This document shows positions 1,774 through 61,270 of a DNA stretch of 64,000 nucleotides, one piece after another. How positions within the stretch are numbered: the first letter of the stretch is position 1; every line of letters begins with the position of its first letter. Below the pieces are notes generated by a model that was given only the letters and a program-made list of their open reading frames with translations, had not been told where the DNA came from and ran no database searches. The translations under genes and the position numbers were made by a program. The DNA is taken from positions 62,001 to 126,000 of the IMG/VR virus record IMGVR_UViG_3300009184_000029; one strand, 5' to 3'.

Positions 1774-1781
1774 TATTTATA
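1774..1781 (+). promoter_or_regulatory. TATTTATA upstream motif (putative late promoter)
   Basis: Exact motif 4 nt before GTG at 1786. Confidence 0.5.
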
Positions 1782-1785
1782 ATTT

Positions 1786-2517
1786 GTGAGTGATAACATT
1801 TTAAAAAGCTTCGAAGTTAAAGAAACACTTAATCCCAAAGTTTGGGATGACTATAAATCTTTGGATAATGCCAAATTAAAATCTGACATTAGAAAAAGTC
1901 TTCTTCAGGTTGCTGAAGAATTTATTTATTTTGTAGATGTTGATTTGGAAATTAGTGATATCGTACTAATGGGTTCATTAGTTAACTTTAATTGGTCCAA
2001 TTTCTCAGATTTTGATTTACATGTTATTGCCGATTTTAATCAGTTTTCAAAAGAACAAAAAGATTTATATGAGCAGTTTTTTGATATGAAAAAGACACTG
2101 TTTAATATAAAACATAATATTAAAATTTTGGGATTTGAAGTTGAACTTTATTTACAGGATAAAAACTCAGCCCATTTTAGTGACGGTGTATATTCATTAA
2201 TTGATGATGAGTTTATTAGTAAACCAAAAAAAATCACAAATAAGATTAATACAAAATTATTACAGGATAAAGCAAAACAATGGATGAGTATTATTGATGG
2301 GGCGATTGATAACGCTAAAGATGAAGAATTACATACGTCAATTGAAATACTTAAAAAATATTATAAAAAACTAAAAAAATATAGACAGTGTGGTCTTGAA
2401 AAGGGTGGAGAGTTTTCTTTAGAAAATTTAGTTTTTAAATATTTGAGACGAAACGGATATGTTGGTAAATTGTTAGATTTTAGAAACGAAATATTTGATA
2501 AAAAAGTTTCAGCATAA
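1786..2517 (+). CDS. DNA polymerase beta superfamily nucleotidyltransferase
   Basis: hGS motif (VLMGSL) followed by SDFDLHV (DxD) and a later acidic residue (EVELY); helical C-terminus; GTG start. Confidence 0.75.
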   Translation: MSDNILKSFEVKETLNPKVWDDYKSLDNAKLKSDIRKSLLQVAEEFIYFVDVDLEISDIVLMGSLVNFNWSNFSDFDLHVIADFNQFSKEQKDLYEQFFDMKKTLFNIKHNIKILGFEVELYLQDKNSAHFSDGVYSLIDDEFISKPKKITNKINTKLLQDKAKQWMSIIDGAIDNAKDEELHTSIEILKKYYKKLKKYRQCGLEKGGEFSLENLVFKYLRRNGYVGKLLDFRNEIFDKKVSA

Positions 2518-2567
2518 TTACTTTATAAAACATTTAAATAATAAATTAAAAAAGTGATTTATTACTA

Positions 2568-2575
2568 TATTTATA
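2568..2575 (+). promoter_or_regulatory. TATTTATA upstream motif
   Basis: Exact motif 13 nt before ATG at 2589. Confidence 0.55.
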
Positions 2576-2588
2576 TATAAAAACTTTT

Positions 2589-6801: not shown

Positions 6802-6829
6802 AATAAACCCCTCAGAAGAGGGGTTTATT
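6802..6829 (+). terminator. intrinsic terminator hairpin
   Basis: AATAAACCCCTC-agaa-GAGGGGTTTATT perfect 12-bp inverted repeat just after the stop at 6793. Confidence 0.85.
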
Positions 6830-6838: not shown

Positions 6839-6846
6839 TATTTATA
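6839..6846 (+). promoter_or_regulatory. TATTTATA upstream motif
   Basis: Exact motif 6 nt before terminase ATG, right after a terminator. Confidence 0.6.
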
Positions 6847-6852: not shown

Positions 6853-8601
6853 ATGAGTTTAACAAAAGAACAAGTTTTATTAGAGTATAGTAAATGTATG
6901 AAATCAACACCATACGCTCTGAAAACGTATTTACAAACGTATGATAATACGGTATCTAAATACGTTCCTTTGGAGTTATTTCCTGACCAACATACATTGA
7001 TTGATGATTATGAAAATTTTAATGAAAATATTGCATTAAAATATAGACAGGCTGGGGTTTCTACAGTAACTGCCGCATGGGCATCCAAAAGATTAGTATT
7101 TGCTTCAAAAAGTAAACCTGAAAAAATATTGATAATTGCTAATAAATTGGACACTGCGGTTGAAATGGCAAATAAAGTAAGGGGATTTACTGAACAATGG
7201 CCAAAATGGGTTGGTGTTACATTCTCCGCAGAAAAAAACTCACAAAGACATTTTAAACTTTCAAATGGATGTGAAGTTAAAGCAGTTGCAACATCTAAAG
7301 ATGCACTGAGAGGATATACTCCAACAATATTAGTTTTTGATGAAGCTGCGTATATTGAAGCAGATGGGGATTTTTGGGCGGCTTGTATGGCGTCTTTATC
7401 TACAGGTGGTAAAGTAATCGTAATATCAACACCAAATGGTTACGACGCAATTTACTATGAAATTTATGACCAAGCAATCAGAGGTATGAATGAATTTAAA
7501 ATTTCTGAAATGGCTTGGTTTAAAGACCCAAGATATGCTAAGGACTTACATTTGGTCAAAGTAAAAGATATTATTCATTATTTTTTAAATCGAGATGAAT
7601 ATAAAGAAGTTGAAATTATTGAATATAAAGATAAGGAGAAAAATTTTGATGAAATAAAAAATTTAATCTCTGAAGGATACAAACCATGTTCTAGTTGGTA
7701 TGAGAAAATGGTTAAAAAACTTAAATACGATAAACGAAAAGTTAACCAAGAACTTGAGTGTCAATTTTTAGGTTCAGGGGATAACGTATTTGATTCCAAT
7801 GTACTTGACTCAATAAGGACAGATATGGTCAAAGACCCTTCATCTAAATTTATGGGGGGGAGTGTGTGGATTTGGAAAGAACCTGTTATGGGTAAAAAAT
7901 ATATAATGGGTGTTGACGTTTCAAGAGGAGACAGTGAAGATTATTCAACTTTTGAAATATTAGATTTTGAATCACGAGAACAAGTTGCAGAATACATAGG
8001 AAAAGTCCCTCCCGATATTTTAGCGGAAATTTGTTATAAATGGGGACAAATGTATAGTGCGTTTATTGTTGTCGATATAACCGGTGGAATGGGTGTCACT
8101 ACCTCAAGAAAATTACAAGAATTAGGTTATCGAGATTTATATGTTGATGGTATAGACGCCACCAACAGATGGAAGTATGACCCAAAAACACAAGATAAAA
8201 TTCCTGGAATTAATTTCAACTCAAAAAGAGTTCAAATAGTTGCATCGTTTGAAGAGTACATTAGACATGGATTGAAAATCTATTCATCAAGACTATTGAA
8301 TGAAATGAACACATTTGTTTATATAAATGGAAGACCTGACCATCAGAGAGGTCAACACGACGATTTAATCATGTCAATTGCAATGTGTTGTTATGTTGGT
8401 GAATCTTCTTTCACTCAATTAACAAAGGTTACCGAACAAGCAAAAGTTATGATAGATTCTTGGCAAGTTAATTCATCAGTACCTGAATCAAGAAGTAGAT
8501 TTTTTGACCCAGTATTTGAACAATACGGACAAGCAAAGAAAAATGAAGCAACAAAAAATGATTATGAAAACTATTTATGGTTATTCGGAGGACGTAGATA
8601 A
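6853..8601 (+). CDS. terL: terminase large subunit (T4 gp17-like)
   Basis: Deviant Walker A LKYRQAGVST, Walker B ILVFDEAAYI, ISTPNG coupling motif, QELECQFLGSG, RNase H-like MGVDVSRGD and HDDLIMS; adjacent to portal. Confidence 0.95.
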   Translation: MSLTKEQVLLEYSKCMKSTPYALKTYLQTYDNTVSKYVPLELFPDQHTLIDDYENFNENIALKYRQAGVSTVTAAWASKRLVFASKSKPEKILIIANKLDTAVEMANKVRGFTEQWPKWVGVTFSAEKNSQRHFKLSNGCEVKAVATSKDALRGYTPTILVFDEAAYIEADGDFWAACMASLSTGGKVIVISTPNGYDAIYYEIYDQAIRGMNEFKISEMAWFKDPRYAKDLHLVKVKDIIHYFLNRDEYKEVEIIEYKDKEKNFDEIKNLISEGYKPCSSWYEKMVKKLKYDKRKVNQELECQFLGSGDNVFDSNVLDSIRTDMVKDPSSKFMGGSVWIWKEPVMGKKYIMGVDVSRGDSEDYSTFEILDFESREQVAEYIGKVPPDILAEICYKWGQMYSAFIVVDITGGMGVTTSRKLQELGYRDLYVDGIDATNRWKYDPKTQDKIPGINFNSKRVQIVASFEEYIRHGLKIYSSRLLNEMNTFVYINGRPDHQRGQHDDLIMSIAMCCYVGESSFTQLTKVTEQAKVMIDSWQVNSSVPESRSRFFDPVFEQYGQAKKNEATKNDYENYLWLFGGRR

Positions 8602-8775: not shown

Positions 8776-10605
8776 ATGCAAGACCAACAAAATAATAATT
8801 TGACAGTATGGCAGAAATTATCTTCGGTTTTTGGGCCAAATTCCCTAATGAACCAAGATTTTCCTACTTTTAAGTTCGATAAAAAAGAACTTTTAAAGAC
8901 TACGTCAAAACAGGAATATGAAAAAGAGAAATTACAAGCTCAACAAACATTTTATTTAGCCAACCAATGGCAAAAAATTGAGAGTAATTTATACACTCAG
9001 GCCACTTATTACGAACCAACTAGATTATCGGCATTTTATGATTATGAATCTATGGAGTTCACACCTGAAATTTCGGCAGCTTTGGATATATATGCCGAAG
9101 AGTCAACTACTCTAAATCAAGATGGATACATGATGCAGATTTATTCAGAGTCAAAAAGAATAAAATCTATACTTGTTGATTTATTTGAGAATGTTTTAGA
9201 TATAAACACTAACTTACCGATGTGGACAAGAAATACTTGTAAATACGGTGATAACTTTGTTTATTTAAAATTAGACCCTGAGAAAGGAATCATTGGAGTC
9301 AACCAATTACCAATCATTGAAATTGAGAGATTGGAAAGAGGAATGATGGCCAAAACCACAGAAGCGTCTCAAGATGTTGAAAAGAAACATATGAAGTTTA
9401 CATGGAAGCACAAAAGTATGGAATTTAATACTTGGGAAGTGGCGCATTTTAGATTACTTGGGGACGATAGAAGATTACCGTATGGAACATCTATGCTTGA
9501 GAAGGCAAGACGTATTTGGAAACAATTATTATTGTCAGAAGACGCGATGTTAATTTATAGAACATCAAGAGCTCCTGAAAGAAGGGTATTTAAGATATTT
9601 GTTGGAAATATGGATGACAAAGACGTTGAACCATATGTACAAAGGGTTGCCAACAAATTTAAAAGGTCTCAAGTTGTTGATGAAAAGACAGGTAATGTTG
9701 ATATGAGATTTAATCAAATGGCGGTAGACCAAGATTATTTTGTACCTGTTAGAGACCCGGCACAAACAATGCCGATTGATACTTTACCTGGTGCAACTAA
9801 CTTATCTGAAATTGCGGATATTGAATATATTCAGAAAAAATTAGTTACCGCTTTAAGAGTACCTAAAACATTTTTGGGATTTGAAGAAGCAATTGCTGAG
9901 GGAAAAGGATTGGCTTTACAAGATATAAGATTTGCAAGAACAATTAATAGGATACAAAAAAGTATGTTGCAAGAATTAAATAAAATTGCAATTGTACATT
10001 TATTCTTATTAGGATTTGAAGATGAATTAACCAACTTCAAACTATCACTAACAAATCCATCTACACAAGCTGATTTATTAAAAATTGATGTTTGGAAAGA
10101 GAAAGTTCTTTTATATAAAGATTTAACTGCTGACCCTGGAAGTGGTATTGCACCTGTTTCAGTTTCGTGGGCGAAGAAACATATTTTAGGATTTTCTGAT
10201 GATGAAATTAAGTTGGATTTACAACAACAAAGAATTGAACGAGCTGTCGGTGAGGAGTTAAAGAAAACTCAGGAAGTTATTAAGAGTACTGGATTATTTG
10301 ATAATATTGATAAACTTTATTCTGATAAAAAAGAAAAAGGTGACGATGGAGGTGAAGGTTCAGGAGGTTCTGAAACATCAGAACCACCAATGGGAGGAGG
10401 AGAAAGTACACCACCACCGGCTGAAGGAGGAGGGGGAGAACCTGAAGGTACACCACCACCAATTACAAGTTCAATAGATGATAGAAAAAGTAAATTAGTC
10501 ATCGAGAATCACATAAATAGAGAAGATGAAATTTACTTATCTGAACAAGCAAATAATCTATTTGCTCAAATGGATGAAAAAATAGAAAACTTACTTAAAC
10601 TATAA
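8776..10605 (+). CDS. portal protein (T4 gp20-like)
   Basis: PEISAALDIYAEES, EDAMLIYRTSRAPERRVFKIFVGN, DYFVPVR, IDTLPGATNL..I.DIEY..KKL..ALRVP. Confidence 0.95.
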   Translation: MQDQQNNNLTVWQKLSSVFGPNSLMNQDFPTFKFDKKELLKTTSKQEYEKEKLQAQQTFYLANQWQKIESNLYTQATYYEPTRLSAFYDYESMEFTPEISAALDIYAEESTTLNQDGYMMQIYSESKRIKSILVDLFENVLDINTNLPMWTRNTCKYGDNFVYLKLDPEKGIIGVNQLPIIEIERLERGMMAKTTEASQDVEKKHMKFTWKHKSMEFNTWEVAHFRLLGDDRRLPYGTSMLEKARRIWKQLLLSEDAMLIYRTSRAPERRVFKIFVGNMDDKDVEPYVQRVANKFKRSQVVDEKTGNVDMRFNQMAVDQDYFVPVRDPAQTMPIDTLPGATNLSEIADIEYIQKKLVTALRVPKTFLGFEEAIAEGKGLALQDIRFARTINRIQKSMLQELNKIAIVHLFLLGFEDELTNFKLSLTNPSTQADLLKIDVWKEKVLLYKDLTADPGSGIAPVSVSWAKKHILGFSDDEIKLDLQQQRIERAVGEELKKTQEVIKSTGLFDNIDKLYSDKKEKGDDGGEGSGGSETSEPPMGGGESTPPPAEGGGGEPEGTPPPITSSIDDRKSKLVIENHINREDEIYLSEQANNLFAQMDEKIENLLKL

Positions 10606-10613
10606 TATTTATT
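10606..10613 (+). promoter_or_regulatory. TATTTATT upstream motif
   Basis: Variant motif 15 nt before ATG at 10629. Confidence 0.5.
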
Positions 10614-11367: not shown

Positions 11368-11394
11368 AAATCCCTGAATAAGGGATTTTTTTTT
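11368..11394 (+). terminator. intrinsic terminator
   Basis: AAATCCCT-gaata-AGGGATTT followed by a T run. Confidence 0.82.
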
Positions 11395-11453
11395 GACTTA
11401 AACATTATTTTTTCATAGATTTTATAAAAATAAACATGTTATGAAAATGTATA

Positions 11454-11917: not shown

Positions 11918-11925
11918 TATTTATA
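11918..11925 (+). promoter_or_regulatory. TATTTATA upstream motif
   Basis: Exact motif 14 nt before ATG at 11940; supports this start over the TTG at 11910. Confidence 0.55.
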
Positions 11926-11939: not shown

Positions 11940-12659
11940 ATGCAAAATTATAAAATATTAGGACCCAAAGATACAGGTAAAGGGATTCTGATTGAGTGGG
12001 ATGCGGGTTATATATCACCTAGAGACGTTAACAATTCAAAATTTTTAAATGAAAATATAAATCCAGCAGATTATTCTAAACCATATGAATTTTATGCGGT
12101 TTTACAAAAATATAATGTACCAAATAGAAATGGTAGAATATATCCTGAAAGAGTATTAAAGAGAGAATCTGAAAATTATAAAAAGAATTACATCAATAAA
12201 GGTGTTGCTCTATCTGAGTTAAATCACCCTGAGTCATCTTTAATTGACTTAGATAGGGTCTCACATATCATTACAGACGTTTGGTGGGACACTAATGTAT
12301 TACTTGGTAAGATTAAATTATTAACTTCACCAGGGTATCATGAAAGAGGAATAGTATCAACCAAGGGTGACCAAGCGGCTAATTTGTTAAGACAAGGGGT
12401 AACATTAGGAATATCTTCAAGAGGAGTTGGGTCATTAAAAAAAGTGGGAGACCAAAACGAAGTTCAGGACGATTTTGAATTAATTTGTTTTGACTTGGTA
12501 TCCTCACCATCAACACCCGGAGCGTATCTGTTTAAAGAACCTGAAGAAAGATTTAATTTTGAAGAGAATATTAAAGAAGAGGAAGATACTCGTATAAAAA
12601 GAATGGGAAGTAAATCTTTATCTATGATGGATAAATTAACTTCATATTTAAATAAATAA
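11940..12659 (+). CDS. prohead core maturation protease (T4 gp21-like)
   Basis: NRNGRIYP, SELNHPE (His), LGISSRGVGS (Ser), FDLVSSPSTPGAY. Confidence 0.93.
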   Translation: MQNYKILGPKDTGKGILIEWDAGYISPRDVNNSKFLNENINPADYSKPYEFYAVLQKYNVPNRNGRIYPERVLKRESENYKKNYINKGVALSELNHPESSLIDLDRVSHIITDVWWDTNVLLGKIKLLTSPGYHERGIVSTKGDQAANLLRQGVTLGISSRGVGSLKKVGDQNEVQDDFELICFDLVSSPSTPGAYLFKEPEERFNFEENIKEEEDTRIKRMGSKSLSMMDKLTSYLNK

Positions 12660-12945: not shown

Positions 12946-12975
12946 AAAAAGGGGGGGGGGTTACCCCCTTTTTTT
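12946..12975 (+). terminator. intrinsic terminator containing a G10 tract
   Basis: AAAAA-G10-TTA-CCCCC-TTTTTTT after the stop at 12923. Confidence 0.75.
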
Positions 12976-13016: not shown

Positions 13017-13024
13017 TATTTATT
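13017..13024 (+). promoter_or_regulatory. TATTTATT upstream motif
   Basis: Variant motif 16 nt before scaffold ATG, after a terminator. Confidence 0.55.
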
Positions 13025-13040: not shown

Positions 13041-14546
13041 ATGGCAACAAAAAATTTAGTTGAAGATGCTTTAATCCAAATCAAGAATTTGGAAGAAGTA
13101 ATTAATGAAAACGCAAAAGAAATACTTCAATCTACCATGAAAGAAGAAATTAGCGAATTAGTAAAAGAGTCTATTAAAGAGGCTGATGAAGACGAGAAGG
13201 ACGAAGCTCCGGATGATGATGAATTAGAAATCGAAGACGAAGTCGAGGTTGATGATTTAGATTCTGACGAGAATGACGACCAAGATGGTATGGAATTCGG
13301 TGGAGGTATGGATTTCTCAAACGAGACACCTACAATCGATTTGACAAAAGGAGCAACAAATCAAGAAGTTGCCAATGTATTCAAAAGACTCAAGGACACA
13401 GATGAGGTTATTGTCGTTAGAGATGGTGACAATATTGACCTTACAGTTGGTGGTGAAGAGTATATCATTAAGTTAAATGAAGGTATGTACATGGATGAAG
13501 ACGAGGATGTAAATCCTGCGGATGACGCTATTCCTATGGAAGAAGAAGACGAATTCGACATGGAACTTACAGGTGACGAAGAATTAGAAGAAGATTTTGA
13601 TGATGAAGACATGGACCGAGAGGAAATGTATAGAAGAATCTTTGCCGAAATGGACGAAACCGAAGAAGATGATACTGAAACCGTTTATGAATTAGAAATG
13701 GACGGAGAAGAGTTACCATCAGGTGATGAATCACTTGAGGAAGATTTTGAAGACATGAATCTTGATAACATGAATTATGATGATGTTGCATCTGATGTTG
13801 CATCTTATGAAGATGAAGAATCTGATGAAGAATTCGAAGAAGGTTGGATGAATGAGGCTCGTAAAACAAACAAGAAAACTATGAAACCTGTAGGAAGAGG
13901 AACGGGTAAACCCAAATTCGAATACAAGAAGACAACTGGCGGATTTAAAGAAAAAATGAAGCAAGGAACTAAAGGTGTTGGAATGGGTAAAGCCAAATTT
14001 GAATACAAGGAATCAGATAACAAAATGAAAAAAGTTGAGACAAAAGAAGCGGCTCGTACTTATGGTTATGGTTCAAAAGATAAAAGTCGTGGATTGAGAA
14101 AAGGTATTACACCAAACAGAAATCTAACATTTGAATCTTATGAAAAATTGGTTGAAGAAATTTCTTCACTTAGACAAAAGAACGAAGAGTACAGAAAAGC
14201 TTTGAACTTGTTTAGAGAAAAATTAAATGAAGTGGCAATCTTTAATTCAAATTTAGCTTACGCTACAAGATTGTTTACTGAACATTCAACTTCAAAACAA
14301 GAAAAGATTAACATTTTGAGAAGATTCGACAGCGTTGATACAATCAAAGAATCTAAAAAATTGTACAAATTTATCAAAGAAGAACTTGATTCAAACAATG
14401 ATAAAGGAACAATTAACGAAGCATTCGATAGAGTTGTAAACGTTGAACCTCAAACTGGCTCAGCTGTGAATTTAATTGAATCAAAAACGTATGAGAATCC
14501 ACAATTCTTGAGAATGAAGGATTTGATGACAAAAATAATAAAATAA
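13041..14546 (+). CDS. prohead core scaffold protein (T4 gp22-like position)
   Basis: Very acidic, coiled-coil C-terminus, many (I/L)xE sites, between protease and MCP. Confidence 0.8.
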   Translation: MATKNLVEDALIQIKNLEEVINENAKEILQSTMKEEISELVKESIKEADEDEKDEAPDDDELEIEDEVEVDDLDSDENDDQDGMEFGGGMDFSNETPTIDLTKGATNQEVANVFKRLKDTDEVIVVRDGDNIDLTVGGEEYIIKLNEGMYMDEDEDVNPADDAIPMEEEDEFDMELTGDEELEEDFDDEDMDREEMYRRIFAEMDETEEDDTETVYELEMDGEELPSGDESLEEDFEDMNLDNMNYDDVASDVASYEDEESDEEFEEGWMNEARKTNKKTMKPVGRGTGKPKFEYKKTTGGFKEKMKQGTKGVGMGKAKFEYKESDNKMKKVETKEAARTYGYGSKDKSRGLRKGITPNRNLTFESYEKLVEEISSLRQKNEEYRKALNLFREKLNEVAIFNSNLAYATRLFTEHSTSKQEKINILRRFDSVDTIKESKKLYKFIKEELDSNNDKGTINEAFDRVVNVEPQTGSAVNLIESKTYENPQFLRMKDLMTKIIK

Positions 14547-14575
14547 ACTAAAAAATAATAAAAACCAAAAATAAA

Positions 14576-16378
14576 ATGGGAGCATTATTAGAAAGTGGAT
14601 TAGTTGGTAATATCGGTCTTAAGCACCTTAAAGTTATCAAGGAAGACACTATAAACAAATGGGACAAATTAGGGTTCCTAGAAGGTCTTAGAGGCCACCT
14701 AAAAGAAAATGTCGCTCAGTTGTATGAAAACCAAGCGTCACATTTGATTAACGAAGCTGCAACTACTGCTGACTCAGGTTCATTCGAAACTGTGGTATTC
14801 CCTATCATCAGACGTGTGTTCTCTAAATTGTTATCAAATGAAATCGTATCTGTACAAGCTATGAACTTACCAATCGGTAAATTGTTCTACTTCGTACCTC
14901 AAATCCAAGCGTATGATACTGCAAGTGGTGGAGCAAACCCTCACTACAAACCATATGGTGCACCAAGTGGTCCATCAACTCCTGGAGCTGGATATGATAA
15001 CAATTCAAAAAACCTTTATGACAGATTCTACGAAGGTGGTGAACCAGCGTTAGACCCACCTGGATTGTTTGACTATTCTAAAGGAGCTTATACTGCAACA
15101 ACTGCAAGTATTGTAACTGCAGTATGGTCTGGTGGAGATTTAGTACAAAATAACGTTACAGCGTCAACAGAATATAGAAAAGTATTATTAATTATGTCAG
15201 GTTTCAGTCAAGACGGACCTGGTAAATTAATTGGTCCTGATGGTAATACTTTGGATAGTGAAACTTTCTTATCTGATTTACAAGTTAGAGCGGCTTCTAC
15301 AGGGGTATTTAGTGGACTTACTAATAGCGGACCATTATTGTTTAGAGTTGTTACTCAAAGATATGGTTATGGTATTGTTCAAGGTTTAAATACTGAAACA
15401 TTTACTACATGGCCAGCGGGTAATGGTGGAGCTTATGATAACATTTGTAACACTGCAGGAAAAATCTATTTGGAAGTTGACTTACAAATACCAGCATGTA
15501 TTTCATGTGGAGCATCAACTCCTGATGGTTACTCAGGTTTAACAACTTCCGTTGGTGCAGGTTCTGTGTTATCAGCAGGAAATCAATTCACAGCTACTTA
15601 TAGACTTTATAAGAACTTAGAATTTGAAGATGCTATCGGTGAAGTTTCTTTTGACCTTCAATCTGTAACAGTTTCTGTAACTGAAAGAAAGTTAAGAGCA
15701 CAATGGTCACCTGAATTAGCTCAAGACGTTGCGGCTTTCCACAACATTGATGCTGAAGCTGAATTAACAGCATTATTGTCTGAACAAGTTGCAGCTGAAA
15801 TTGACCGTGAAATCTTACGTGACTTACGTAAAGGTGCAGCTTGGACATTACGTTGGGATTACAACGGATGGAAGAGACTGAACAACCAAGCTACTCCATA
15901 CACTCAAAAAGACTGGAACCAAACTTTGATTACTGCGATTAACCAAATCTCAGCTCAAATTCACAAGTCTACTTTAAGAGGTGGAGCTAACTGGATTGTT
16001 GTATCTTCTGAAATCAGTGCGATTTTTGATGATTTGGAATACTTCCACGTATCAAATGCGGCTCCTGAGCAAGACCAATTTAACATGGGTATTGAAAGAG
16101 TTGGTACTTTGAGTGGTCGTTACCAAGTATACCGTGACCCATACTTCCCACCAAACACTGTGTTGATTGGTCACAAAGGTACATCTTTATTGGATACTGG
16201 TTACATCTACGCTCCATACGTACCTCTACAATTAACTCCAACTATGTATAACCCATTCAACTTCACACCTATCAAAGGTATCATGACACGTTACGCTAAG
16301 AAGATGGTTAACAACCGTTTCTATGGTCGTATCATAGTTGATGGAGTACGTACATTTGACTTAAATGAATTAAGATAA
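14576..16378 (+). CDS. major capsid protein (T4 gp23-like) with large insertion
   Basis: VFPIIRRVF..L..NEIVSVQAMNLP.G..FY; SRKLRAQWSPELAQD-like segment; IDAEAELT.LLSEQVAAEIDREI; GYIYAPYVPL; GIMTRYA. Confidence 0.97.
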   Translation: MGALLESGLVGNIGLKHLKVIKEDTINKWDKLGFLEGLRGHLKENVAQLYENQASHLINEAATTADSGSFETVVFPIIRRVFSKLLSNEIVSVQAMNLPIGKLFYFVPQIQAYDTASGGANPHYKPYGAPSGPSTPGAGYDNNSKNLYDRFYEGGEPALDPPGLFDYSKGAYTATTASIVTAVWSGGDLVQNNVTASTEYRKVLLIMSGFSQDGPGKLIGPDGNTLDSETFLSDLQVRAASTGVFSGLTNSGPLLFRVVTQRYGYGIVQGLNTETFTTWPAGNGGAYDNICNTAGKIYLEVDLQIPACISCGASTPDGYSGLTTSVGAGSVLSAGNQFTATYRLYKNLEFEDAIGEVSFDLQSVTVSVTERKLRAQWSPELAQDVAAFHNIDAEAELTALLSEQVAAEIDREILRDLRKGAAWTLRWDYNGWKRLNNQATPYTQKDWNQTLITAINQISAQIHKSTLRGGANWIVVSSEISAIFDDLEYFHVSNAAPEQDQFNMGIERVGTLSGRYQVYRDPYFPPNTVLIGHKGTSLLDTGYIYAPYVPLQLTPTMYNPFNFTPIKGIMTRYAKKMVNNRFYGRIIVDGVRTFDLNELR

Positions 16379-16396
16379 TATTTCTTAATGTGTATA

Positions 16397-16426
16397 AAAA
16401 AAGGTCAGAGAAATCTGACCTTTTTT
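16397..16426. terminator. bidirectional intrinsic terminator
   Basis: AAAAAAGGTCAGA-gaaa-TCTGACCTTTTTT between convergent MCP and 16435..16689. Confidence 0.9.
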
Positions 16427-16434
16427 ATTTTTAA

Positions 16435-16689
16435 TTAATCCATTGTTATTTTCCGTAAACACTTGGATAACAATTCTGACTCAACTATGGTAAACACTCC
16501 TTTAGAGTAAGCGTGTTTTATACCTTCCATAATTAATACAAATGATTGTTCTTTATTTACATTCTGAATAAATAAATCTAAATCTTTATCAGATGCGTAA
16601 CTTAAATAATTTAATAATGTTCCTTTTGGTTCAATACTTTTTAAGTCGTTTTGTAATTCTTCTATTTTACTTTTGTCTTGTTCTGTCAT
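16435..16689 (-). CDS. hypothetical protein
   Basis: 84-aa ORF ending at the shared terminator. Confidence 0.75.
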   Translation of the reverse strand: MTEQDKSKIEELQNDLKSIEPKGTLLNYLSYASDKDLDLFIQNVNKEQSFVLIMEGIKHAYSKGVFTIVESELLSKCLRKITMD

Positions 16690-16695: not shown

Positions 16696-16709
16696 TATTT
16701 ATATTTATA
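16696..16709 (+). promoter_or_regulatory. tandem overlapping TATTTATA motifs in a divergent intergenic region
   Basis: TATTTATATTTATA, 17 nt before ATG at 16727. Confidence 0.55.
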
Positions 16710-17772: not shown

Positions 17773-18204
17773 TTTAGTCTGAACAATATTATTATATATT
17801 GTTGATAAAGAATCTTTAATTTGAATATCCAAGTCTTTTTCCATTTTTAAAGCCCTTTCTTCCATTTCTTTCTTAAAGAAATCTTTTAATTTTACCCAAT
17901 CAATATCTGGAAGTTTAATAAAATAACTGTAAGTATGATTTGTTATAGTTACCTCACCCTCTTCCATTGTTATGAAAATTCCACAATTTTCATTTTTAAT
18001 ATATTTTTTACGAGAAATTGGAGCAATTAACAATTCCGAATTTGGGTCGTGAATTAATTGTCTACAAATAGCACTACATTGGTTAAATCGAGTTCTTTGG
18101 ATTTTTCTCAATTCATTGTTGTGTAGATTTCTAAGAAATATTTTGTATTTCGCAATTAGTTTTTTGAATGGTGACATATTTGTTTTTTTTACAAATATAT
18201 ACAC
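17761..18204 (-). CDS. hypothetical protein
   Basis: 147-aa ORF; convergent 12-nt overlap with the peptidase gene. Confidence 0.7.
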   Translation of the reverse strand: MYIFVKKTNMSPFKKLIAKYKIFLRNLHNNELRKIQRTRFNQCSAICRQLIHDPNSELLIAPISRKKYIKNENCGIFITMEEGEVTITNHTYSYFIKLPDIDWVKLKDFFKKEMEERALKMEKDLDIQIKDSLSTIYNNIVQTKSFE

Positions 18205-20695: not shown

Positions 20696-20703
20696 TATAA
20701 ATA
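20696..20703 (-). promoter_or_regulatory. TATTTATA upstream motif (minus strand)
   Basis: Plus-strand TATAAATA, 17 nt upstream of ATG at 20678. Confidence 0.6.
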
Positions 20704-24799: not shown

Positions 24800-24807
24800 T
24801 ATAAATA
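24800..24807 (-). promoter_or_regulatory. TATTTATA upstream motif (minus strand)
   Basis: Plus-strand TATAAATA, 4 nt upstream of ATG at 24795. Confidence 0.55.
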
Positions 24808-24822: not shown

Positions 24823-25554
24823 TTATTCATCAACTACATTTGACAAACCAATATATAATTTTTTATATTTTTTAATTGATTGTCTAATTTCCTTAGTTGA
24901 AAGGTTAGTCATTTCCCTCAGAGATAAAAGAATAAGATTTTTATTAAACTTATTGTTTGATGACGATAAAAATATTGATTCATAATTTGAAAATATTTCA
25001 TGTAATGCCAATCCTAGTTTATATTCATTATCTGAAAGAGACGGTTCATCTAACACTATTCTAATCTCAACAATTAAATCATTTATTACTGATTTTTCAC
25101 CCCCTTCTTCAAATTGCATGTCGTATGACATTTTTGGATTGTTTTCCAAGTCTGAAGAAATATCTTCGTATGAAATTTTTCTGTTTGTTTCTTTTTGGTC
25201 TTTTAGTATTTGACCCATTAAATAATTTTTACAAATTGTCCCAAAATAGGAATAAGCCTTTTTTTCTTTTGACGGACTAAACTTGTCAATTTTTGTCATT
25301 AAAAAGGAATGGGTATCGGTATGTAAATCCAAAAAGTCCATGTCTTTTCTGTACAATTTATATCTCCTTATGATAGATGAAATCATCTTGTCTAAAGGAC
25401 TTCTGAGAAATTGATTGTATATTTTATTTTTCTCATTGAAAGTATCAGCGGTGAGAAACATCCTCACCGCTAACTCTTCTCGTTCCGCAAAATAATTTTC
25501 ATTCTTTTTTGGACGTTTTGTATCATCGAGAACAATTATTGTATCCCCAGTCAT
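24823..25554 (-). CDS. phage late-transcription sigma factor (gp55-like, sigma70 region 2)
   Basis: KMISSIIRRY...D......FLM.KIDKFSPSKEKKAYSYFGTICKNYL resembles region-2 FDPxKxxxxxYFxxI. Confidence 0.72.
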   Translation of the reverse strand: MTGDTIIVLDDTKRPKKNENYFAEREELAVRMFLTADTFNEKNKIYNQFLRSPLDKMISSIIRRYKLYRKDMDFLDLHTDTHSFLMTKIDKFSPSKEKKAYSYFGTICKNYLMGQILKDQKETNRKISYEDISSDLENNPKMSYDMQFEEGGEKSVINDLIVEIRIVLDEPSLSDNEYKLGLALHEIFSNYESIFLSSSNNKFNKNLILLSLREMTNLSTKEIRQSIKKYKKLYIGLSNVVDE

Positions 25555-47803: not shown

Positions 47804-48641
47804 ACTTTAATTTTTTTACAAGTTCTTTAAAAGAAATACCTTCTTTTTTTGCTTTTAACTTTAATTTCTCAATTATTTTTTCAATTTGGTTATCTGAATA
47901 TATTTCGTTATCGTTATTTTTATTATTCAACAAAATATCCTCAACCATTTTAATTGCTCTTTTTTTTCTTATCTCTTCTATTTTATCTTTTTCAAAAAGG
48001 TTCATTCTATCAATAAATCCTTTCATTTTTCTAATTTTTTTAGGAGCTCTTTTTGTTCTTTTACCTGTTGGGTCCTTACCAAAATCTACAGTTCTTTCAT
48101 ATGCGTCTTTGGGATTTAAATCCATTTTGTCTTTTAAAAACTTGTAGGTTTTTTTACCGTCCATATCCTTAGTTTCATCATAACCAAAGGCTGGGTCAAA
48201 ATTCACCTCAGAAACGACATCTTCTGATTTTTCTTCAGATTCTCCCCAATAAACTCGATACCCTCTTGTTAAAGGATTATTAGTCTGTCTACTCATCGTA
48301 ACATAAACGTCGGTTGTATATTTTGGTGATAATGATAAACCTAATGGAATTCTTGAAGATAAAAATGTACCATCAGAGTCAACTAACTCACCCAACTCTT
48401 CTTTCTTTGAATCAAATTTTTTCTTTAATTCTGACTGAGTTTTTGGTTTTTTATCTTTTATTAAATCTTTAATTAATTTTTCAAATTCTTTTTTATTTTC
48501 TTTTTTGAATTTGATTATCTCATCATTTTTTCTTGCCTCGGTCAATGTATTATTAATTGAATAATACAAGTCAATATGATTTTTTCTTTCCTTCATGAAA
48601 AAATAATAAGGATTTAAAAAATATTCTTTATCAAAATGCAT
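47796..48641 (-). CDS. hypothetical protein
   Basis: 281-aa ORF, first gene of the minus block. Confidence 0.78.
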   Translation of the reverse strand: MHFDKEYFLNPYYFFMKERKNHIDLYYSINNTLTEARKNDEIIKFKKENKKEFEKLIKDLIKDKKPKTQSELKKKFDSKKEELGELVDSDGTFLSSRIPLGLSLSPKYTTDVYVTMSRQTNNPLTRGYRVYWGESEEKSEDVVSEVNFDPAFGYDETKDMDGKKTYKFLKDKMDLNPKDAYERTVDFGKDPTGKRTKRAPKKIRKMKGFIDRMNLFEKDKIEEIRKKRAIKMVEDILLNNKNNDNEIYSDNQIEKIIEKLKLKAKKEGISFKELVKKLKYE

Positions 48642-48657: not shown

Positions 48658-48685
48658 TATAAATACTTTATAATAACTATTTATT
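48658..48685. promoter_or_regulatory. divergent pair of TATTTAT(A/T) motifs
   Basis: TATAAATA at 48658-65 (sense for the minus gene at 48641) and TATTTATT at 48678-85 (sense for the plus gene at 48692). Confidence 0.62.
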
Positions 48686-50902: not shown

Positions 50903-50910
50903 TATTTATA
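50903..50910 (+). promoter_or_regulatory. TATTTATA upstream motif
   Basis: Exact motif 4 nt before tail fibre ATG. Confidence 0.55.
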
Positions 50911-55045: not shown

Positions 55046-55098
55046 AATCTATTTATTAGTTTTGTTGTAATTGTATATTATATTCATAATTTAAAATT

Positions 55099-58008: not shown

Positions 58009-58708
58009 TTTAAATATGAAGTTTTGGGATGACGGAAAGGAGGATTCAACAAGAGTTAGAAACGTCTTATTTTCGTGGGGGGAATTAAAAAAATTATCAT
58101 CATTTCTTTTTGAGAATGGTGTGTTACCTAAATCAACCCTTTATGATTTTTCAGAAAAAAGAATTATCCCTGACTCAACACACATACCATATCCTTTAGG
58201 CGTTTATAAAAAGGCAGAAAAAACAAACATAATTTTAAACCAACGAGTTGGGTATGATTTTTTTATGATGATTGATTGTGACGCTTTTTTTCACGAGGAT
58301 GATTATCCAAAATTATTAGATGTTATATTAAATTTAAAAAAAGGAGACGTGATTACTTTTGATTTGGCTAAATTACACAATAATGTTTCTGATTATTTAA
58401 TTGACAATAAATTTATTAAAGATAAATCAGATTGGGATTTTGCATATTCTGGTGATAAATCTAATGGTCCATTAAATGGAAGAATTGGTGGGTTAGGTGG
58501 TGTCTATATTTGTGATACTGATTTACTACGAAACTTAGGGGGATTTGACTCTAAATTTGAGACGTGGGGTGGTGAAGATGGAGAAATGATGGATAGAATT
58601 TTAACATCAGATATGGTAAAAAATGTAATTCCTATTAGAGATTTTTTCCCATTTCATTTACCACATTTTATCGATTGGGGTAATAAAAATTACAACAAAA
58701 ACGCATGA
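57995..58708 (+). CDS. GT7/GT2-type glycosyltransferase
   Basis: MIDCDAF (DxD), LGGFDSKFETWGGED. Confidence 0.82.
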   Translation: MVSISLNMKFWDDGKEDSTRVRNVLFSWGELKKLSSFLFENGVLPKSTLYDFSEKRIIPDSTHIPYPLGVYKKAEKTNIILNQRVGYDFFMMIDCDAFFHEDDYPKLLDVILNLKKGDVITFDLAKLHNNVSDYLIDNKFIKDKSDWDFAYSGDKSNGPLNGRIGGLGGVYICDTDLLRNLGGFDSKFETWGGEDGEMMDRILTSDMVKNVIPIRDFFPFHLPHFIDWGNKNYNKNA

Positions 58709-59580
58709 AAAAAATTAAGTTTATAACCGCAATATATAATGACCTTTTTGGTAGTGAATTTGGGGGTAGGATTAACCGACAACATCACTATAAATGGAGT
58801 TTGATTTCATTATTAAGAATGACAGACGCCGATTTTGTATGTTATACATCAAAAAGAGAACTTGATGATTTACGTAGTTTCTTCTATGAAAAGAATAACA
58901 TACCAGAAAGTCAACTTAAATTTATTGAGTTTGAATTATCAGATAAAAAAAATTTCAGTTTTATTGATGAATATAAAAATATTGAGGAAATTCGCAAATC
59001 AGACAGATGTTATGAAATACAATACAATAAGTTTTTTTGGTTCTTAAATGAGGATTTGTCTTATGAATATTATTATTGGTTAGATGCAGGATTGTCTCAT
59101 TGTGGGTTATTACCTGATAAGTACTTAACGTATTGTGATGAATATAGAGGATATTATGATTCTTATTTTTTTGATAATAATTTTTTAAATAATCTATTAG
59201 AAAAAACAAAAGAAAACATAGTTGTATTTTCAAAGGACAACCATAGAAATTTTTGGAGTGGAACAGTTCCACCTCAATATTATAATGAATACGATTCTTC
59301 AGTTCATATTATTGGTGGGTTATTTGGTGGTAAAAAAGAAAATATGAAGTGGTTTGTTGACGAATTTGATAAGATGTTAAATCTAATAACCAACGAACAA
59401 AAAAAGATATATAGTGAAGAACAAATAATGTCATTAATTTATCAAAACAATAAAAGTAAATTTAAAACATTTGATTTTGATGTATGGTGGCATGAGACAA
59501 ATGGCCCCAAAGGACTACCTGAAGATTTTTTTGTAGTTAATAAAAGTTTTTATAAATCATTAGAAGACGTTAATATATGA
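58705..59580 (+). CDS. HtrL/WlaTC-like protein
   Basis: YEIQYNKF.FL, YWLDAG, IIGGLFGG, EEQIMS. Confidence 0.75.
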   Translation: MKKIKFITAIYNDLFGSEFGGRINRQHHYKWSLISLLRMTDADFVCYTSKRELDDLRSFFYEKNNIPESQLKFIEFELSDKKNFSFIDEYKNIEEIRKSDRCYEIQYNKFFWFLNEDLSYEYYYWLDAGLSHCGLLPDKYLTYCDEYRGYYDSYFFDNNFLNNLLEKTKENIVVFSKDNHRNFWSGTVPPQYYNEYDSSVHIIGGLFGGKKENMKWFVDEFDKMLNLITNEQKKIYSEEQIMSLIYQNNKSKFKTFDFDVWWHETNGPKGLPEDFFVVNKSFYKSLEDVNI

Positions 59581-61256
59581 GTTTTACTTTAGTTACTGGT
59601 TTATGGGATATTGGAAGAGGAGAACTTAATGAAGGATGGTCAAGAAGTTTTAATCACTACTTAGATAAATTTGAGGAGTTATTAAAAATAGAAGAAAATT
59701 TAATAATTTTTGGAGATTCAGAGTTAGAAAAATTTGTAAGTGAAAGAAGAAATCCAAAAAATACTCAATTTATAATTAGAAATTTAGATTGGTTTAAAAA
59801 TAACGATTACTATGAAAAAATTCAAAATATAAGAAATAGTTCGGAGTGGAAACATCAATCAGGATGGTTAAAGGATTCCACTCAAAGTAGGTTAGAAATG
59901 TATAACCCTTTGGTTATGTCAAAAATGTTTTTATTAAATGACGCTAGAATTTTTGACAAGTTTAACTCTCAATTTTTATTTTGGATTGATGCAGGTATTA
60001 CCAACACAATCCATCCTGGATATTTTACTCACGATAAAGTATTTGATAAATTACCTAAAGAAATTAAAAAGTTTACATTTGTTTGTTTCCCATATAATGC
60101 GTCCAATGAAATTCACGGATTTGAATATCCTGAAATAAATAAATGGGCGGAAGGTAATGTTAAAAAAGTTGCCAGAGGAGGATTTTTTGGAGGTCCTAAA
60201 GAAACTATATCTGAAATAAACTCACAGTATTATAACTATTTAATTAACACATTAAGTGAGGGATTAATGGGAACTGAAGAGTCAATATTCTCAATAATGG
60301 TATATTCCAAATCAGAATTAATTGATTATTACGAAATCGAAGAGAATGGACTGATGGGTAAGTTTTTTGAGGACATTAAGGAAAATAGTTTGGATAAAAA
60401 AAGTGAATATAAACCAAAATCAACGTACCTTACAAAATACGATAAGAATAATGTCGGTTTATATGTAATAACTTTTAATAGTCCAAATCAATTTAAAACT
60501 TTAATTAATTCAATGTTAGAATATGATTCGGACTTTGTTAATTCCCCAAAAAGAAAAATATTATTAAATAACTCTACCGATTTATCGACCACGGATGAAT
60601 ATGTTAGATTGTGTGAAGAATTTGGATTTGAACACATAAAAAAAGATAACATAGGTATTACAGGTGGAAGACAATTCATTGCGGAACACTTCAATGAAAC
60701 TGAATTAGATTACATGTTCTTTTTTGAGGATGATATGTTTTTTTATAATAAAAAGGGGGAAGTTTGTAATAATGGATTTAACAGATATACCCCAAATTTA
60801 TATAAAAAATCTTTAAGTATTATTCATGAAGAAGATTTTGATTTTTTAAAATTAAATTTCACCGAATTTTATGGTGATAATTCAACACAGTGGAGTTGGT
60901 ATAATGTACCCCAAAATTTTAGAGAAACTCATTGGCCTAAAAACAAAAAATTACCTGTACAAGGATTAGACAAGAATGCTCCAAGAACAAAGTTTAATGA
61001 AATAAAATCATATAATGGATTACCATATGCTTCAGGGGAAGTATACATATGTAATTGGCCGATTCTCCTATCAAAAGAAGGTAGTTATAAATGTTATGTC
61101 GAAACAAAATATGCAAGTCCATTTGAACAAACAATAATGTCTCACAATTACCAAGAGATGGTTAAAGGTAATTTAAACCCAGGATTACTATTAATTACTC
61201 CTACTGAACATAATAGATTTGAACATTATGAATCAAGTTTAAGGAAAGAATGTTAA
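59577..61256 (+). CDS. HtrL/WlaTC-like domain fused to GT-A-like domain
   Basis: TLVTGLWDIGR, YNPLVMSK, FWIDAG, RGGFFGG, TEESIFS; C-terminal YVITFNSP and FFEDDMF. Confidence 0.78.
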   Translation: MSFTLVTGLWDIGRGELNEGWSRSFNHYLDKFEELLKIEENLIIFGDSELEKFVSERRNPKNTQFIIRNLDWFKNNDYYEKIQNIRNSSEWKHQSGWLKDSTQSRLEMYNPLVMSKMFLLNDARIFDKFNSQFLFWIDAGITNTIHPGYFTHDKVFDKLPKEIKKFTFVCFPYNASNEIHGFEYPEINKWAEGNVKKVARGGFFGGPKETISEINSQYYNYLINTLSEGLMGTEESIFSIMVYSKSELIDYYEIEENGLMGKFFEDIKENSLDKKSEYKPKSTYLTKYDKNNVGLYVITFNSPNQFKTLINSMLEYDSDFVNSPKRKILLNNSTDLSTTDEYVRLCEEFGFEHIKKDNIGITGGRQFIAEHFNETELDYMFFFEDDMFFYNKKGEVCNNGFNRYTPNLYKKSLSIIHEEDFDFLKLNFTEFYGDNSTQWSWYNVPQNFRETHWPKNKKLPVQGLDKNAPRTKFNEIKSYNGLPYASGEVYICNWPILLSKEGSYKCYVETKYASPFEQTIMSHNYQEMVKGNLNPGLLLITPTEHNRFEHYESSLRKEC

Positions 61257-61262
61257 GGTTGA

Positions 61263-61270
61263 TATTTATT
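61263..61270 (+). promoter_or_regulatory. TATTTATT upstream motif
   Basis: 12 nt before ATG at 61283, where structural genes resume. Confidence 0.55.

What the first reader, a model, noticed from the sequence alone, without database searches (positions are those of the whole stretch)
1774..61270. Recurrent sense-strand TATTTAT(A/T) motif is the reverse complement of the T4 late promoter
Seen: motif just upstream of starts at 1774, 2568, 6839, 10606, 11918, 13017, 16696/16702, 48678, 50903 and 61263 on the plus strand, and 20696, 24800 and 48658 on the minus strand. At these sites it flips with gene direction and often follows a terminator, mostly before structural genes. Spacing to the start codon is bimodal (4-6 nt or 12-17 nt). 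Known: T4 gp55 recognises TATAAATA on the sense strand. Inference: the gp55-like sigma here reads an inverted late promoter, and the 4-6 nt class may give leaderless or near-leaderless mRNAs.
Basis: partly seen in the sequence, partly recalled or inferred. Interest (0 to 1): 0.62.

Follow-up and report, generated by a model that had tools for sequence, protein, structure and literature searches.

The report
Conserved phage promoter box TATTTAT(A/T)
The short DNA word TATTTAT(A/T) sits just ahead of about a quarter of the genes of this uncultured lake phage and its relatives; it is best read as the phage's own promoter signal, often so close to the start codon that the message would have no leader.

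Summary
All 13-14 listed sites exist at the stated coordinates, strands and spacings. The word is not enriched in the window overall (38 vs 43 expected). It is about 17 times denser in non-coding DNA, 73 of 80 intergenic copies point at the next gene, and TATTTATA is the commonest 8-mer upstream of starts (38 vs 1.3 expected). The spacing is bimodal: 3-6 nt and 10-17 nt.

The octamer is conserved before orthologous genes in 80 related contigs while the flanks diverge. It also precedes the terminase, portal and sheath genes of the cultured Flavobacterium phage immuto. Lake metatranscriptome contigs from three studies begin 17-25 nt after the box at 13017 and stop at the terminator after the capsid gene.

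Best reading: a -10-like promoter box with no -35 element, probably read by the gp55-like factor (24823-25554). That factor's best structural match is T4 gp55. Host-type TAnnTTTG boxes lie at the same 4-nt distance from ATGs, so the short-spacing class is predicted leaderless.

The "inverted promoter" idea is unnecessary: in the same orientation the box matches T4's TATAAATA at 6 of 8 positions. Late timing is unproven, and a second, SigA-like sigma exists outside the window. No start site was mapped.

The parts
1774..1781 (+). TATTTATA box, 4 nt before GTG 1786 (243-aa nucleotidyltransferase-like ORF); short-spacing class
   Evidence: the GTG is the only standard start ahead of the weak Polbeta-type nucleotidyltransferase match (residues 54-114)
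2568..2575 (+). TATTTATA box, 13 nt before ATG 2589
6839..6846 (+). TATTTATA box, 6 nt before ATG 6853 (large terminase); follows the hairpin at 6802-6829
8572..8579 (+). variant box TATTTATG inside the 3' end of the terminase gene, 21 nt before a 42-aa ORF that precedes the portal gene; 21 of 22 relatives have TATTTATW before the portal gene
10606..10613 (+). TATTTATT box directly after the portal stop codon, 15 nt before ATG 10629; conserved in 25 of 26 orthologous regions
11918..11925 (+). TATTTATA box, 14 nt before ATG 11940 (prohead protease); TATTTA conserved in 33 of 33 orthologous regions, with eighth base A, T or C
12946..12973 (+). terminator-like hairpin plus T-run ahead of the 13017 box
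13017..13024 (+). TATTTATT box, 16 nt before ATG 13041; conserved in 22 of 25 orthologous regions; RNA-library contigs begin at 13041-13049
13041..16378 (+). two-gene unit (501-aa protein plus Gp23 major capsid protein) with no box before the capsid gene (1 of 60 relatives); an RNA contig spans the junction
16397..16426 (+). terminator-like hairpin after the capsid gene; no RNA-library contigs in the 16390-16580 bin in four runs
16696..16709 (+). two overlapping TATTTATA boxes, 23 and 17 nt before ATG 16727; box conserved in 33 of 36 orthologous regions at varying distance (3-31 nt)
18192..18199 (-). host-type Bacteroidota -7 box TATATTTG, 14 nt before the start at 18177 (a different promoter class, for comparison)
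20696..20703 (-). TATTTATA box, 17 nt before the start at 20678 (498-aa protein); conserved in 24 of 27 orthologous regions
24800..24807 (-). TATTTATA box, 4 nt before the start at 24795 (120-aa protein); 16 of 16 orthologous regions have the box exactly 3 nt before ATG while the 3 nt vary
24823..25554 (-). gp55-like sigma region-2 factor, 243 aa, candidate reader of the box
48658..48665 (-). TATTTATA box, 16 nt before the start at 48641; heads the 23-kb minus-strand glycan-synthesis gene array; back to back with the 48678 box
48678..48685 (+). TATTTATT box, 6 nt before ATG 48692 (735-aa protein)
50903..50910 (+). TATTTATA box, 4 nt before ATG 50915 (1376-aa protein); short-spacing class
55050..55057 (+).
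61263..61270 (+). TATTTATT box, 12 nt before ATG 61283

Best explanation
TATTTAT(A/T) is the core, -10-like element of a phage-specific promoter class. The base before it is rarely T, and there is no -35 or -33 partner. The class is used by this uncultured freshwater T4-superfamily phage, a large clade of relatives, and the cultured Flavobacterium phage immuto. It is read in the ordinary orientation on the non-template strand, most probably by host RNA polymerase carrying the phage's gp55-like sigma region-2 factor (24823-25554). By analogy with the host -7 box TAnnTTTG, which lies at -12 to -5 with 4-5 nt to the start site, transcription should begin 4-6 nt after the octamer. Sites 3-6 nt from the start codon would then give leaderless mRNAs that start at the A of AUG. 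Sites 10-17 nt away would give leaders of about 6-13 nt. The dip between the two modes fits the fact that very short leaders serve neither initiation route. Shown: motif, strand, position, conservation, fold of the factor, and co-occurrence of factor and motif. Inferred: start-site position, which sigma reads the box, and late timing.
For: Position and strand statistics. No information upstream of the octamer in 64 aligned sites. Footprinting in 80 related contigs (capsid protein 75-88% identical) shows the octamer kept while flanks and distances vary: portal 21/22, g10629 25/26, g13041 22/25, g16727 33/36, g19182 24/27, g24433 16/16. It is absent before internal operon genes, including the capsid gene (1/60). 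Flavobacterium phage immuto has the same word before terminase, portal, sheath and structural genes; it is the top 7-mer there, 13 occurrences in the 40 nt upstream of 45 starts. True host-type TTTG-N20-TAnnTTTG promoters in this genome sit exactly 4 nt before ATGs at five places, the same geometry as the short-spacing class. The literature gives 4-5 nt from that box to the start site (PMC6847099, PMC9723704). Exact-match contigs from lake RNA libraries of three studies begin at 13041, 13049 and 13048, downstream of the box at 13017-13024. Bins upstream are empty in three of four runs, a contig spans the g13041/capsid junction, and there are no contigs in the bin beyond the terminator at 16397-16426. 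The factor gets three weak but concordant sigma region-2 sequence hits, repeated independently in four orthologs. Nearly all top Foldseek hits are sigma factors. The best match in an exhaustive structural search is T4 gp55, 7d7d_F, Z 9.6, rmsd 2.7 over 98 residues. The complete immuto genome has a homolog of this factor (E 3.7e-13) but no Sigma70_r2 gene, so this factor, not the SigA-like one, travels with the motif. Boxes precede terminase, protease, adaptor, baseplate wedge and sheath genes. They are absent before the DNA polymerase, ribonucleotide reductase, SbcC-like and Lon-like genes. None of six promoter motifs mapped in a Flavobacterium host resembles the box.
Against: No start site was mapped. 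The RNA evidence is assembled contigs from one locus; they cannot fix a 5' end or exclude processing, and RNA libraries may contain DNA. The sigma assignment is indirect. The sequence match to gp55 is weak (hhalign E 0.006, probability 6%). Structural Z values of other sigma region-2 domains are within 1 unit of the gp55 value. The genome encodes a second, complete SigA-like sigma. No gp45 match was found and gp33 was barely probed, though the phage is too far from T4 for that to mean much. Microcystis phage Mel-JY01 has a homolog of the factor but shows no enrichment of the word in 40 kb. About half of the sites precede genes of unknown function, and one heads a glycan-synthesis array, so 'late' is unproven. 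The sigma-like gene itself lies inside an array with no visible early promoter.
Confidence: 0.72

Rival explanations
1. The box is a promoter element, but it is read by another sigma: the phage's own SigA-like factor (genome 207897-208697) or host SigA treating it as a variant -7 box.
For: A complete sigma with regions 1.2, 2 and 4 is encoded; its best solved relative is SigA at E 2e-45. The box shares T1, A2, T5 and T7 with TAnnTTTG and the same distance to ATG. In Flavobacterium the -33 element is weak anyway (PMC6847099), so the lack of an upstream element does not exclude a SigA-type reader.
Against: Complete phage immuto has the motif but no Sigma70_r2 gene. Host promoters have nearly invariant T-6 and G-5, which the box lacks, and no host motif class resembles it.
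Confidence: 0.17
2. One reading: the gp55-like factor reads an inverted T4 late promoter, that is, it recognises TATAAATA on the template strand.
For: TATTTATA is the exact reverse complement of TATAAATA. Template-strand promoter recognition is known from memory (not checked here) for phage AR9's non-virion polymerase, whose holoenzyme appears in the fold list at Z 7.8.
Against: In the same orientation 6 of 8 bases already match T4's box, so no inversion is needed. Sigma region 2 binds the non-template strand with fixed polarity (established knowledge), and the template strand runs the other way along a different path. The box starts with TA, as do all -10 and -7 elements. The T4 word in sense orientation is the minority: 17 sense against 38 antisense.
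Confidence: 0.03
3. The word acts in the RNA, not the DNA: an AU-rich translation enhancer or ribosome landing site in a Shine-Dalgarno-less host, or an endonuclease processing site that frees downstream cistrons.
For: It lies close to start codons. Bacteroidota lack Shine-Dalgarno sequences (PMC6847099). It often abuts the preceding stop codon. Contig ends cannot tell primary ends from processed ends.
Against: It is absent before internal operon genes, including the most translated one, the capsid gene (1/60). The distance to the ATG varies from 3 to 31 nt among orthologs while the word stays invariant. RNA-library contigs start downstream of it. Bona fide host promoter boxes occupy the same position. 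It sits after terminators more often than other genes do.
Confidence: 0.07
4. Chance product of AT-rich intergenic DNA.
For: The total count in the window equals expectation; the genome is 31% G+C.
Against: Intergenic excess over dinucleotide shuffles, strand bias p = 6e-15, sharp spacing modes, and conservation across 80 diverged contigs and a cultured phage.
Confidence: 0.01

Closest known systems
Phage T4 late promoter TATAAATA, read by gp55 with gp33 and the gp45 clamp (established knowledge; structure 7d7d)
   Same: A single AT-rich octamer near -10 with no -35 element. It precedes head, tail and packaging genes in a genome with T4-type capsid, portal and terminase. A phage factor whose region-2 domain best matches gp55 is encoded. 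6 of 8 bases are identical in the same orientation.
   Different: The central AA is TT here, and the T4 word itself is not used in sense orientation. The factor is 243 aa with an extra C-terminal helical domain. gp33 and gp45 were not found. Many sites abut the start codon. The box also precedes many ORFans and a glycan-synthesis array.
Bacteroidota SigA promoter, -33 TTTG / -7 TAnnTTTG (PMC6847099, PMC9723704)
   Same: It starts with TA, has T at positions 5 and 7, and has the same modal distance to the ATG as true host-type boxes in this genome. This implies the same -12 to -5 placement.
   Different: It lacks the nearly invariant T-6 and G-5 and has no -33 element. It is not among the six motif classes mapped in a Flavobacterium host.
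Far T4-superfamily phages with altered late machinery, e.g. Sinorhizobium phage PhiM9: gp55 present, gp33 absent, plus a canonical RpoE-type sigma (PMC4621102)
   Same: A distant T4 relative with a gp55-like gene, no recognisable gp33, and an additional canonical sigma gene.
   Different: The extra sigma here is SigA-like, not ECF-type. A defined and different late-type box is visible here.
Leaderless mRNAs (common in Actinobacteria, Deinococcus and archaea; about 5.5% of mapped mRNAs in Flavobacterium psychrophilum, PMC9723704)
   Same: Promoter box a fixed few nucleotides before an ATG, so the predicted start site is the A of the start codon.
   Different: About 33 phage-box sites plus about 6 host-type sites in one 223-kb genome have this geometry. 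That is a far higher share of transcription units than in the hosts. Not yet shown experimentally.

Membership tests
T4-type late transcription system (late promoter plus gp55/gp33/gp45) | Single AT-rich octamer near -10, no -35 element | tested here: met
   64 aligned sites carry information only in the octamer and the base before it.
T4-type late transcription system (late promoter plus gp55/gp33/gp45) | Consensus TATAAATA on the non-template strand | tested here: not met
   The sense strand reads TATTTATW. TATAAATA upstream of genes is 17 sense against 38 antisense. 6 of 8 positions are shared.
T4-type late transcription system (late promoter plus gp55/gp33/gp45) | Phage-encoded gp55-type sigma region-2 factor | tested here: met
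   Best structural match is T4 gp55 (7d7d_F, Z 9.6). Weak sequence hits: Sigma70_r2, PHROG 'late sigma', TIGR02937. Family-level sequence membership stays weak (hhalign E 0.006).
T4-type late transcription system (late promoter plus gp55/gp33/gp45) | gp33 co-activator | tested here: inconclusive
   The only probe was the 120-aa ORF next to the factor, which has no match among solved-structure sequences. gp33 itself was never used as a query, and the other T4 proteins tried find almost nothing in this genome.
T4-type late transcription system (late promoter plus gp55/gp33/gp45) | gp45 sliding clamp | tested here: inconclusive
   PF09116 and PF02916 give no match in the 223-kb record, which is estimated 76% complete.
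T4-type late transcription system (late promoter plus gp55/gp33/gp45) | Precedes late (virion) genes, absent before replication genes | tested here: inconclusive
   True for annotated genes. About half of the sites precede ORFans and one heads a glycan-synthesis array. No timing data.
T4-type late transcription system (late promoter plus gp55/gp33/gp45) | Start site about 5-7 nt downstream of the box | not testable with these tools
   Only assembled RNA-library contigs were available. They begin 17-25 nt after one box, which is compatible but not precise.
Bacteroidota SigA promoter (-33 TTTG / -7 TAnnTTTG) | Invariant T-6 and G-5 in the -7 box | tested here: not met
   Position 6 is always A. 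Position 8 is A 38, T 22, C 2, G 2.
Bacteroidota SigA promoter (-33 TTTG / -7 TAnnTTTG) | -33 TTTG partner | tested here: not met
   No information upstream of the box. True host-type sites in the same genome do show TTTG-N20.
Leaderless mRNA | Primary 5' end at the start codon | not testable with these tools
   Predicted from the 3-6 nt spacing at 33 sites and from host-type boxes at 4 nt. No 5'-end data.

The most novel reading that the evidence does not exclude
A whole, abundant clade of freshwater and brackish T4-superfamily phages of Bacteroidota has re-specified the T4-type late box (centre AA changed to TT) for a diverged gp55-like factor. It also places both this box and its host-type early boxes directly against start codons. 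Roughly 40% of its transcription units would then be leaderless, in hosts where only about 5% of mRNAs are. That would be a phage-specific translation strategy in a phylum without Shine-Dalgarno initiation.
Probability: 0.45. Interest if true: 0.7.

Novelty: new variant of a known kind. Interest (0 to 1): 0.55.

Why it matters
T4-type late promoters are described as nearly invariant (TATAAATA, or NATAAATA in cyanophages; from memory) across very different hosts. A clade-wide, sharply defined alternative box with its own diverged gp55-like factor would show how promoter and sigma specificity co-evolve. It would also give a simple sequence marker for transcription units in thousands of uncultured lake phage contigs; the factor family has more than 8000 members. 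The tight coupling of promoter boxes to start codons predicts heavy use of leaderless translation in Bacteroidota phages. This can be tested directly in the cultured immuto / Flavobacterium sp. LMO8 pair. I found no description of this motif in the searchable literature.

Tried and rejected
- Whole-window enrichment: not enriched. Only position and strand carry the signal.
- E. coli-type -35/-10 promoters: 73 found against 76 expected, so not used.
- Sequence search of the factor against solved structures, single sequence and profile: nothing significant. Foldseek E-values are weak, though the top hits are nearly all sigma factors. Only the exhaustive structural search put gp55 first.
- Pfam gp45 families in the genome: no match.
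- phmmer and blastp of nine T4 proteins (gp55, gp45, gp44, gp62, gp43, RegA, RpbA, gp46, gp47) against all 237 predicted proteins: no usable hits, with even the DNA polymerase at E 0.009. Absence of the T4 late-transcription partners is therefore uninformative; gp33 was not among the queries.
- Polymerase-like domains in the six largest unannotated proteins: none.
- Host-type promoter ahead of the sigma-like gene inside the minus-strand array: none with a -33 partner.
- Microcystis phage Mel-JY01, which has a homolog of the factor: no enrichment or strand bias of the word in 40 kb, so the factor family does not always go with this box.
- Rfam over the window and one flank, and tRNA scans: nothing relevant.
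- Strand imbalance of the word inside genes (22 sense, 37 antisense): rejected as selection, because I judge that the A-over-T skew of coding strands visible accounts for it (my own estimate, not a tool result).

Full report
**What the window is.** The window is bases 62001-126000 of a single 222,829-bp IMG/VR virus record with 30.7% G+C, estimated 76% complete. It encodes a Gp23-type major capsid protein (14576-16378), a T4-type portal (8776-10605), a large terminase (6853-8601) and a prohead protease (11940-12659). The nearest cultured DNA is Flavobacterium phage vB_FspM_immuto, about 70% identical over part of the capsid gene. Start codons have no Shine-Dalgarno signal. Canonical Bacteroidota promoters (TTTG-N20-TAnnTTTG) occur in the genome. 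Near-identical sequence occurs in lake-water RNA libraries. The phage is therefore an uncultured freshwater T4-superfamily phage of a Bacteroidota host. It is very far from T4 itself: T4 DNA polymerase finds its counterpart only at E 0.009.

- The count of TATTTATW in the whole window is not above chance: 38 against 43 +/- 7.
- Genome-wide, 79-80 of 139 copies lie in the 6.8% of non-coding DNA. That is 5.05 per kb against 0.29 per kb in coding DNA.
- Intergenic copies number 79 against 25.3 +/- 5.3 in dinucleotide shuffles of the intergenic DNA itself. In the window alone the figures are 16 against 4.9 +/- 2.2.
- 73 of 80 intergenic copies point toward the next gene (p = 6e-15).
- TATTTATA is the commonest 8-mer in the 40 nt before starts: 38 against 1.3 expected, with 17 in antisense, which I attribute mainly to divergent gene pairs.
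- 64 of 237 predicted genes have TATTTATN within 30 nt upstream. Aligned, they carry information only in the 7-mer core, the eighth base (A 38, T 22, C 2, G 2) and the base before the core, which is rarely T. Nothing is visible where a -35 or -33 element would lie.
- The distance to the ATG is bimodal: 3-6 nt at 33 sites and 10-17 nt at 22 sites.
- 'Follows a terminator' holds for a minority: 9 of 64 sites against 5 of 173 other genes. In the window it holds at 6839 and 13017.

**Conservation.** Eighty related viral contigs, with capsid protein 75-88% identical, were fetched. Upstream of orthologous genes the octamer stands as an island in diverged sequence:
- portal 21/22
- gene after the portal 25/26
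- g13041 22/25
- g16727 33/36
- g19182 24/27
- g24433 16/16, always exactly 3 nt before ATG while those 3 nt vary
- protease 33/33 for TATTTA, with A, T or C at position 8

The box is absent before internal operon genes: capsid 1/60, the sigma-like gene 0/9, g20704 0/22. The distance to the start varies among orthologs of one gene (3-31 nt for g16727) while the word does not change. Pooled, the relatives reproduce the two spacing modes, 3-5 nt (53) and 11-17 nt (107), with a dip at 6-9. In the cultured phage immuto (35% G+C) the same word precedes the terminase, portal, sheath, tail-fibre and structural genes. It is the top upstream 7-mer there.

**What it is.** The anatomy is that of a promoter. 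The box lies between terminator and gene, is strand-specific, stands at the head of operons and is absent inside them. Three further points support this.
1. True host-type boxes TAnnTTTG, some with a TTTG 20 nt upstream, lie exactly 4 nt before ATGs at five places in this genome. In Flavobacterium that box occupies -12 to -5, with 4-5 nt to the start site (PMC6847099, PMC9723704). The phage box has the same modal distance (4-5 nt), so it most simply occupies the same promoter position.
2. Exact-match contigs from RNA libraries of three studies begin at 13041, 13049 and 13048, that is 17-25 nt after the box at 13017-13024. Bins upstream are empty in three of four runs. A contig spans the g13041/capsid junction, and no contigs lie in the bin beyond the terminator at 16397-16426. 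Contigs cannot fix a 5' end, so this is compatible evidence, not proof.
3. None of the six promoter motif classes mapped in a Flavobacterium host resembles the word, and E. coli-type promoters are not enriched. The box is therefore phage-specific.

**Who reads it.** ORF 24823-25554 (243 aa) gets weak but concordant sigma region-2 hits from three libraries over the same residues: Pfam Sigma70_r2 at E 0.008, PHROG 'late sigma transcription factor' at E 8.5e-4, and TIGR02937 at E 1.2e-4. Four orthologs repeat the weak Sigma70_r2 hit independently. A model built from 20 homologs (pLDDT 67) matches almost only sigma factors in Foldseek. In an exhaustive structural search its best match is T4 gp55 in the gp45-dependent activation complex: 7d7d_F, Z 9.6, rmsd 2.7 over 98 residues. 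Other sigma region-2 domains follow within one Z unit. Profile comparison with T4 gp55 aligns 42 columns at 31% identity, E 0.006. The C-terminal 90 residues have no clear region-4 match.

The genome also encodes, outside the window (207897-208697), a complete SigA-like sigma with regions 1.2, 2 and 4. The two candidates can be separated by co-occurrence. The complete immuto genome has the motif, has a homolog of the gp55-like profile (E 3.7e-13), and has no Sigma70_r2 gene at all. This favours the gp55-like factor. A caveat is Microcystis phage Mel-JY01, which has a homolog of the factor but shows no enrichment of the word in 40 kb.

**The 'inverted promoter' idea.** TATTTATA is the reverse complement of TATAAATA only because the T4 box is nearly palindromic. 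In the same orientation the two share 6 of 8 positions (TAT..ATA). The box also starts with TA, as every -10 or -7 element does. Sigma region 2 binds the non-template strand with fixed polarity (established knowledge), so a flipped box would drive transcription the other way. The data need only a change of specificity at the two central bases. Template-strand reading cannot be excluded from sequence alone, but nothing supports it.

**Leaderless class.** If the octamer lies at -12 to -5, sites with 3-6 nt spacing start at or within a base of the A of the ATG. This applies to 33 phage-box sites and about 6 host-type sites, by rough count some 40% of transcription units. In Flavobacterium hosts leaderless mRNAs are about 5.5% of mapped mRNAs, and 87% of leaders exceed 10 nt. 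The invariant 3-nt spacing before g24433 orthologs, with free sequence in the gap, argues for a constraint on distance. The dip at 6-9 nt fits the known poor translation of very short leaders (established knowledge). Site 1774 would give a leaderless GUG. All of this is inference until start sites are mapped.

**Is it 'late'?** In the window and the right arm the box precedes terminase, protease, head-tail adaptor-like, baseplate wedge, sheath and very large virion-type genes. The DNA polymerase, ribonucleotide reductase, SbcC-like and Lon-like protease genes lack it. But about 35 sites in the left arm precede genes with no recognisable function, and the site at 48658 heads a 23-kb array of sugar-metabolism genes. 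There are no timing data. 'Phage-specific, probably late' is as far as the evidence goes.

**Novelty.** Searches of the held literature for the word with late promoters, for gp55 or late promoters in Flavobacterium or Bacteroidetes phages, for the immuto phages, and for leaderless mRNAs in Flavobacterium phages found no description of this motif. Far T4 relatives with gp55, without gp33 and with an extra canonical sigma are known, for example PhiM9 (PMC4621102). I class this as a new variant of a known kind: a T4-type late promoter with changed specificity and unusually tight coupling to start codons.

Noticed in passing
outside the window: genome 207897-208697 (+), L094:6897-7697: A second, complete sigma factor of 266 aa with regions 1.2, 2 and 4. 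Its best solved relatives are SigA/RpoD at E 2e-45. It is short, like the region-1.1-less primary sigma of Bacteroidota. The gene ahead of it has a host-type TATATTTG box. Which promoters it reads is unknown.
   Followed up: partly
window 25554-48641 (-): About 30 tightly packed co-oriented genes form a glycan-biosynthesis island inside the structural region: GT2-like, GT11-like and GT1 glycosyltransferases, a DegT aminotransferase and a GDP-mannose 4,6-dehydratase. Only one TATTTATA box is visible, at its head (48658). The gp55-like gene lies directly downstream at 24823-25554.
   Followed up: partly
outside the window: genome 25693(-), 27949(+), 32297(+), 33605(+), 60550(+) (L083-L086): Canonical Bacteroidota promoters, several with TTTG 20 nt upstream of TAnnTTTG, lie exactly 4 nt before ATGs. 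Presumed early genes would therefore also be leaderless.
   Followed up: partly
outside the window: genome 57633-57646 (L086:13633-13646): Two divergent genes are separated by a perfectly palindromic 14-bp spacer, ATATTTATAAATAT. It holds one box on each strand, overlapping by 4 bp, each 5 nt from its ATG. This is a minimal bidirectional promoter pair. Similar back-to-back pairs lie at genome 15251/15265 and 24747/24761, and at window 48658/48678.
   Followed up: no
window 11368-11453: Inside the head-gene cluster, g11454 (149 aa) lacks the phage box. It has a terminator followed by TTTTGACT-N-TAGATTTT (host-like -33/-7) and an ATAAAC word. The arrangement recurs in most of the 14 orthologous upstream regions printed (none of 30 has the phage box), so this may be a differently timed gene among late genes.
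   Followed up: no
outside the window: left arm, e.g. genome 14844-15245(-), 24409-24741(-), 30703-31014(+): A family of small paralogous genes whose reading frames open with near-identical nucleotide sequence. Each has its own box 4-5 nt before the ATG. No function was found.
   Followed up: no
L101 (Microcystis phage Mel-JY01, record positions 138806-179441): This phage, recorded as infecting a cyanobacterium, encodes a homolog of the gp55-like factor. Several of its upstream regions carry Bacteroidota-style TAnnTTTG words (TAAGTTTG, TATATTTG, TATGTTTG), but TATTTAT is not enriched.
   Followed up: partly
window 24823-25554 (-) and upstream to 48641: The sigma-like gene has no box and no host-type promoter of its own in this phage or in 9 relatives. 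How it is first expressed is unexplained if the only promoter of the array depends on it.
   Followed up: partly
outside the window: genome 56830-56906 (+), L086:12830-12906: The only tRNA gene found in the searched stretches, which together cover the whole record: tRNA-Arg(TCT).
   Followed up: no
outside the window: genome 25689-27960 (L083:14689-16960): A 2.3-kb stretch without confidently called genes, flanked by divergent host-type leaderless promoters and containing several more TAnnTTTG boxes. No Rfam family or tRNA was found. ORFs of 130 and 173 aa with atypical codon usage are present.
   Followed up: partly
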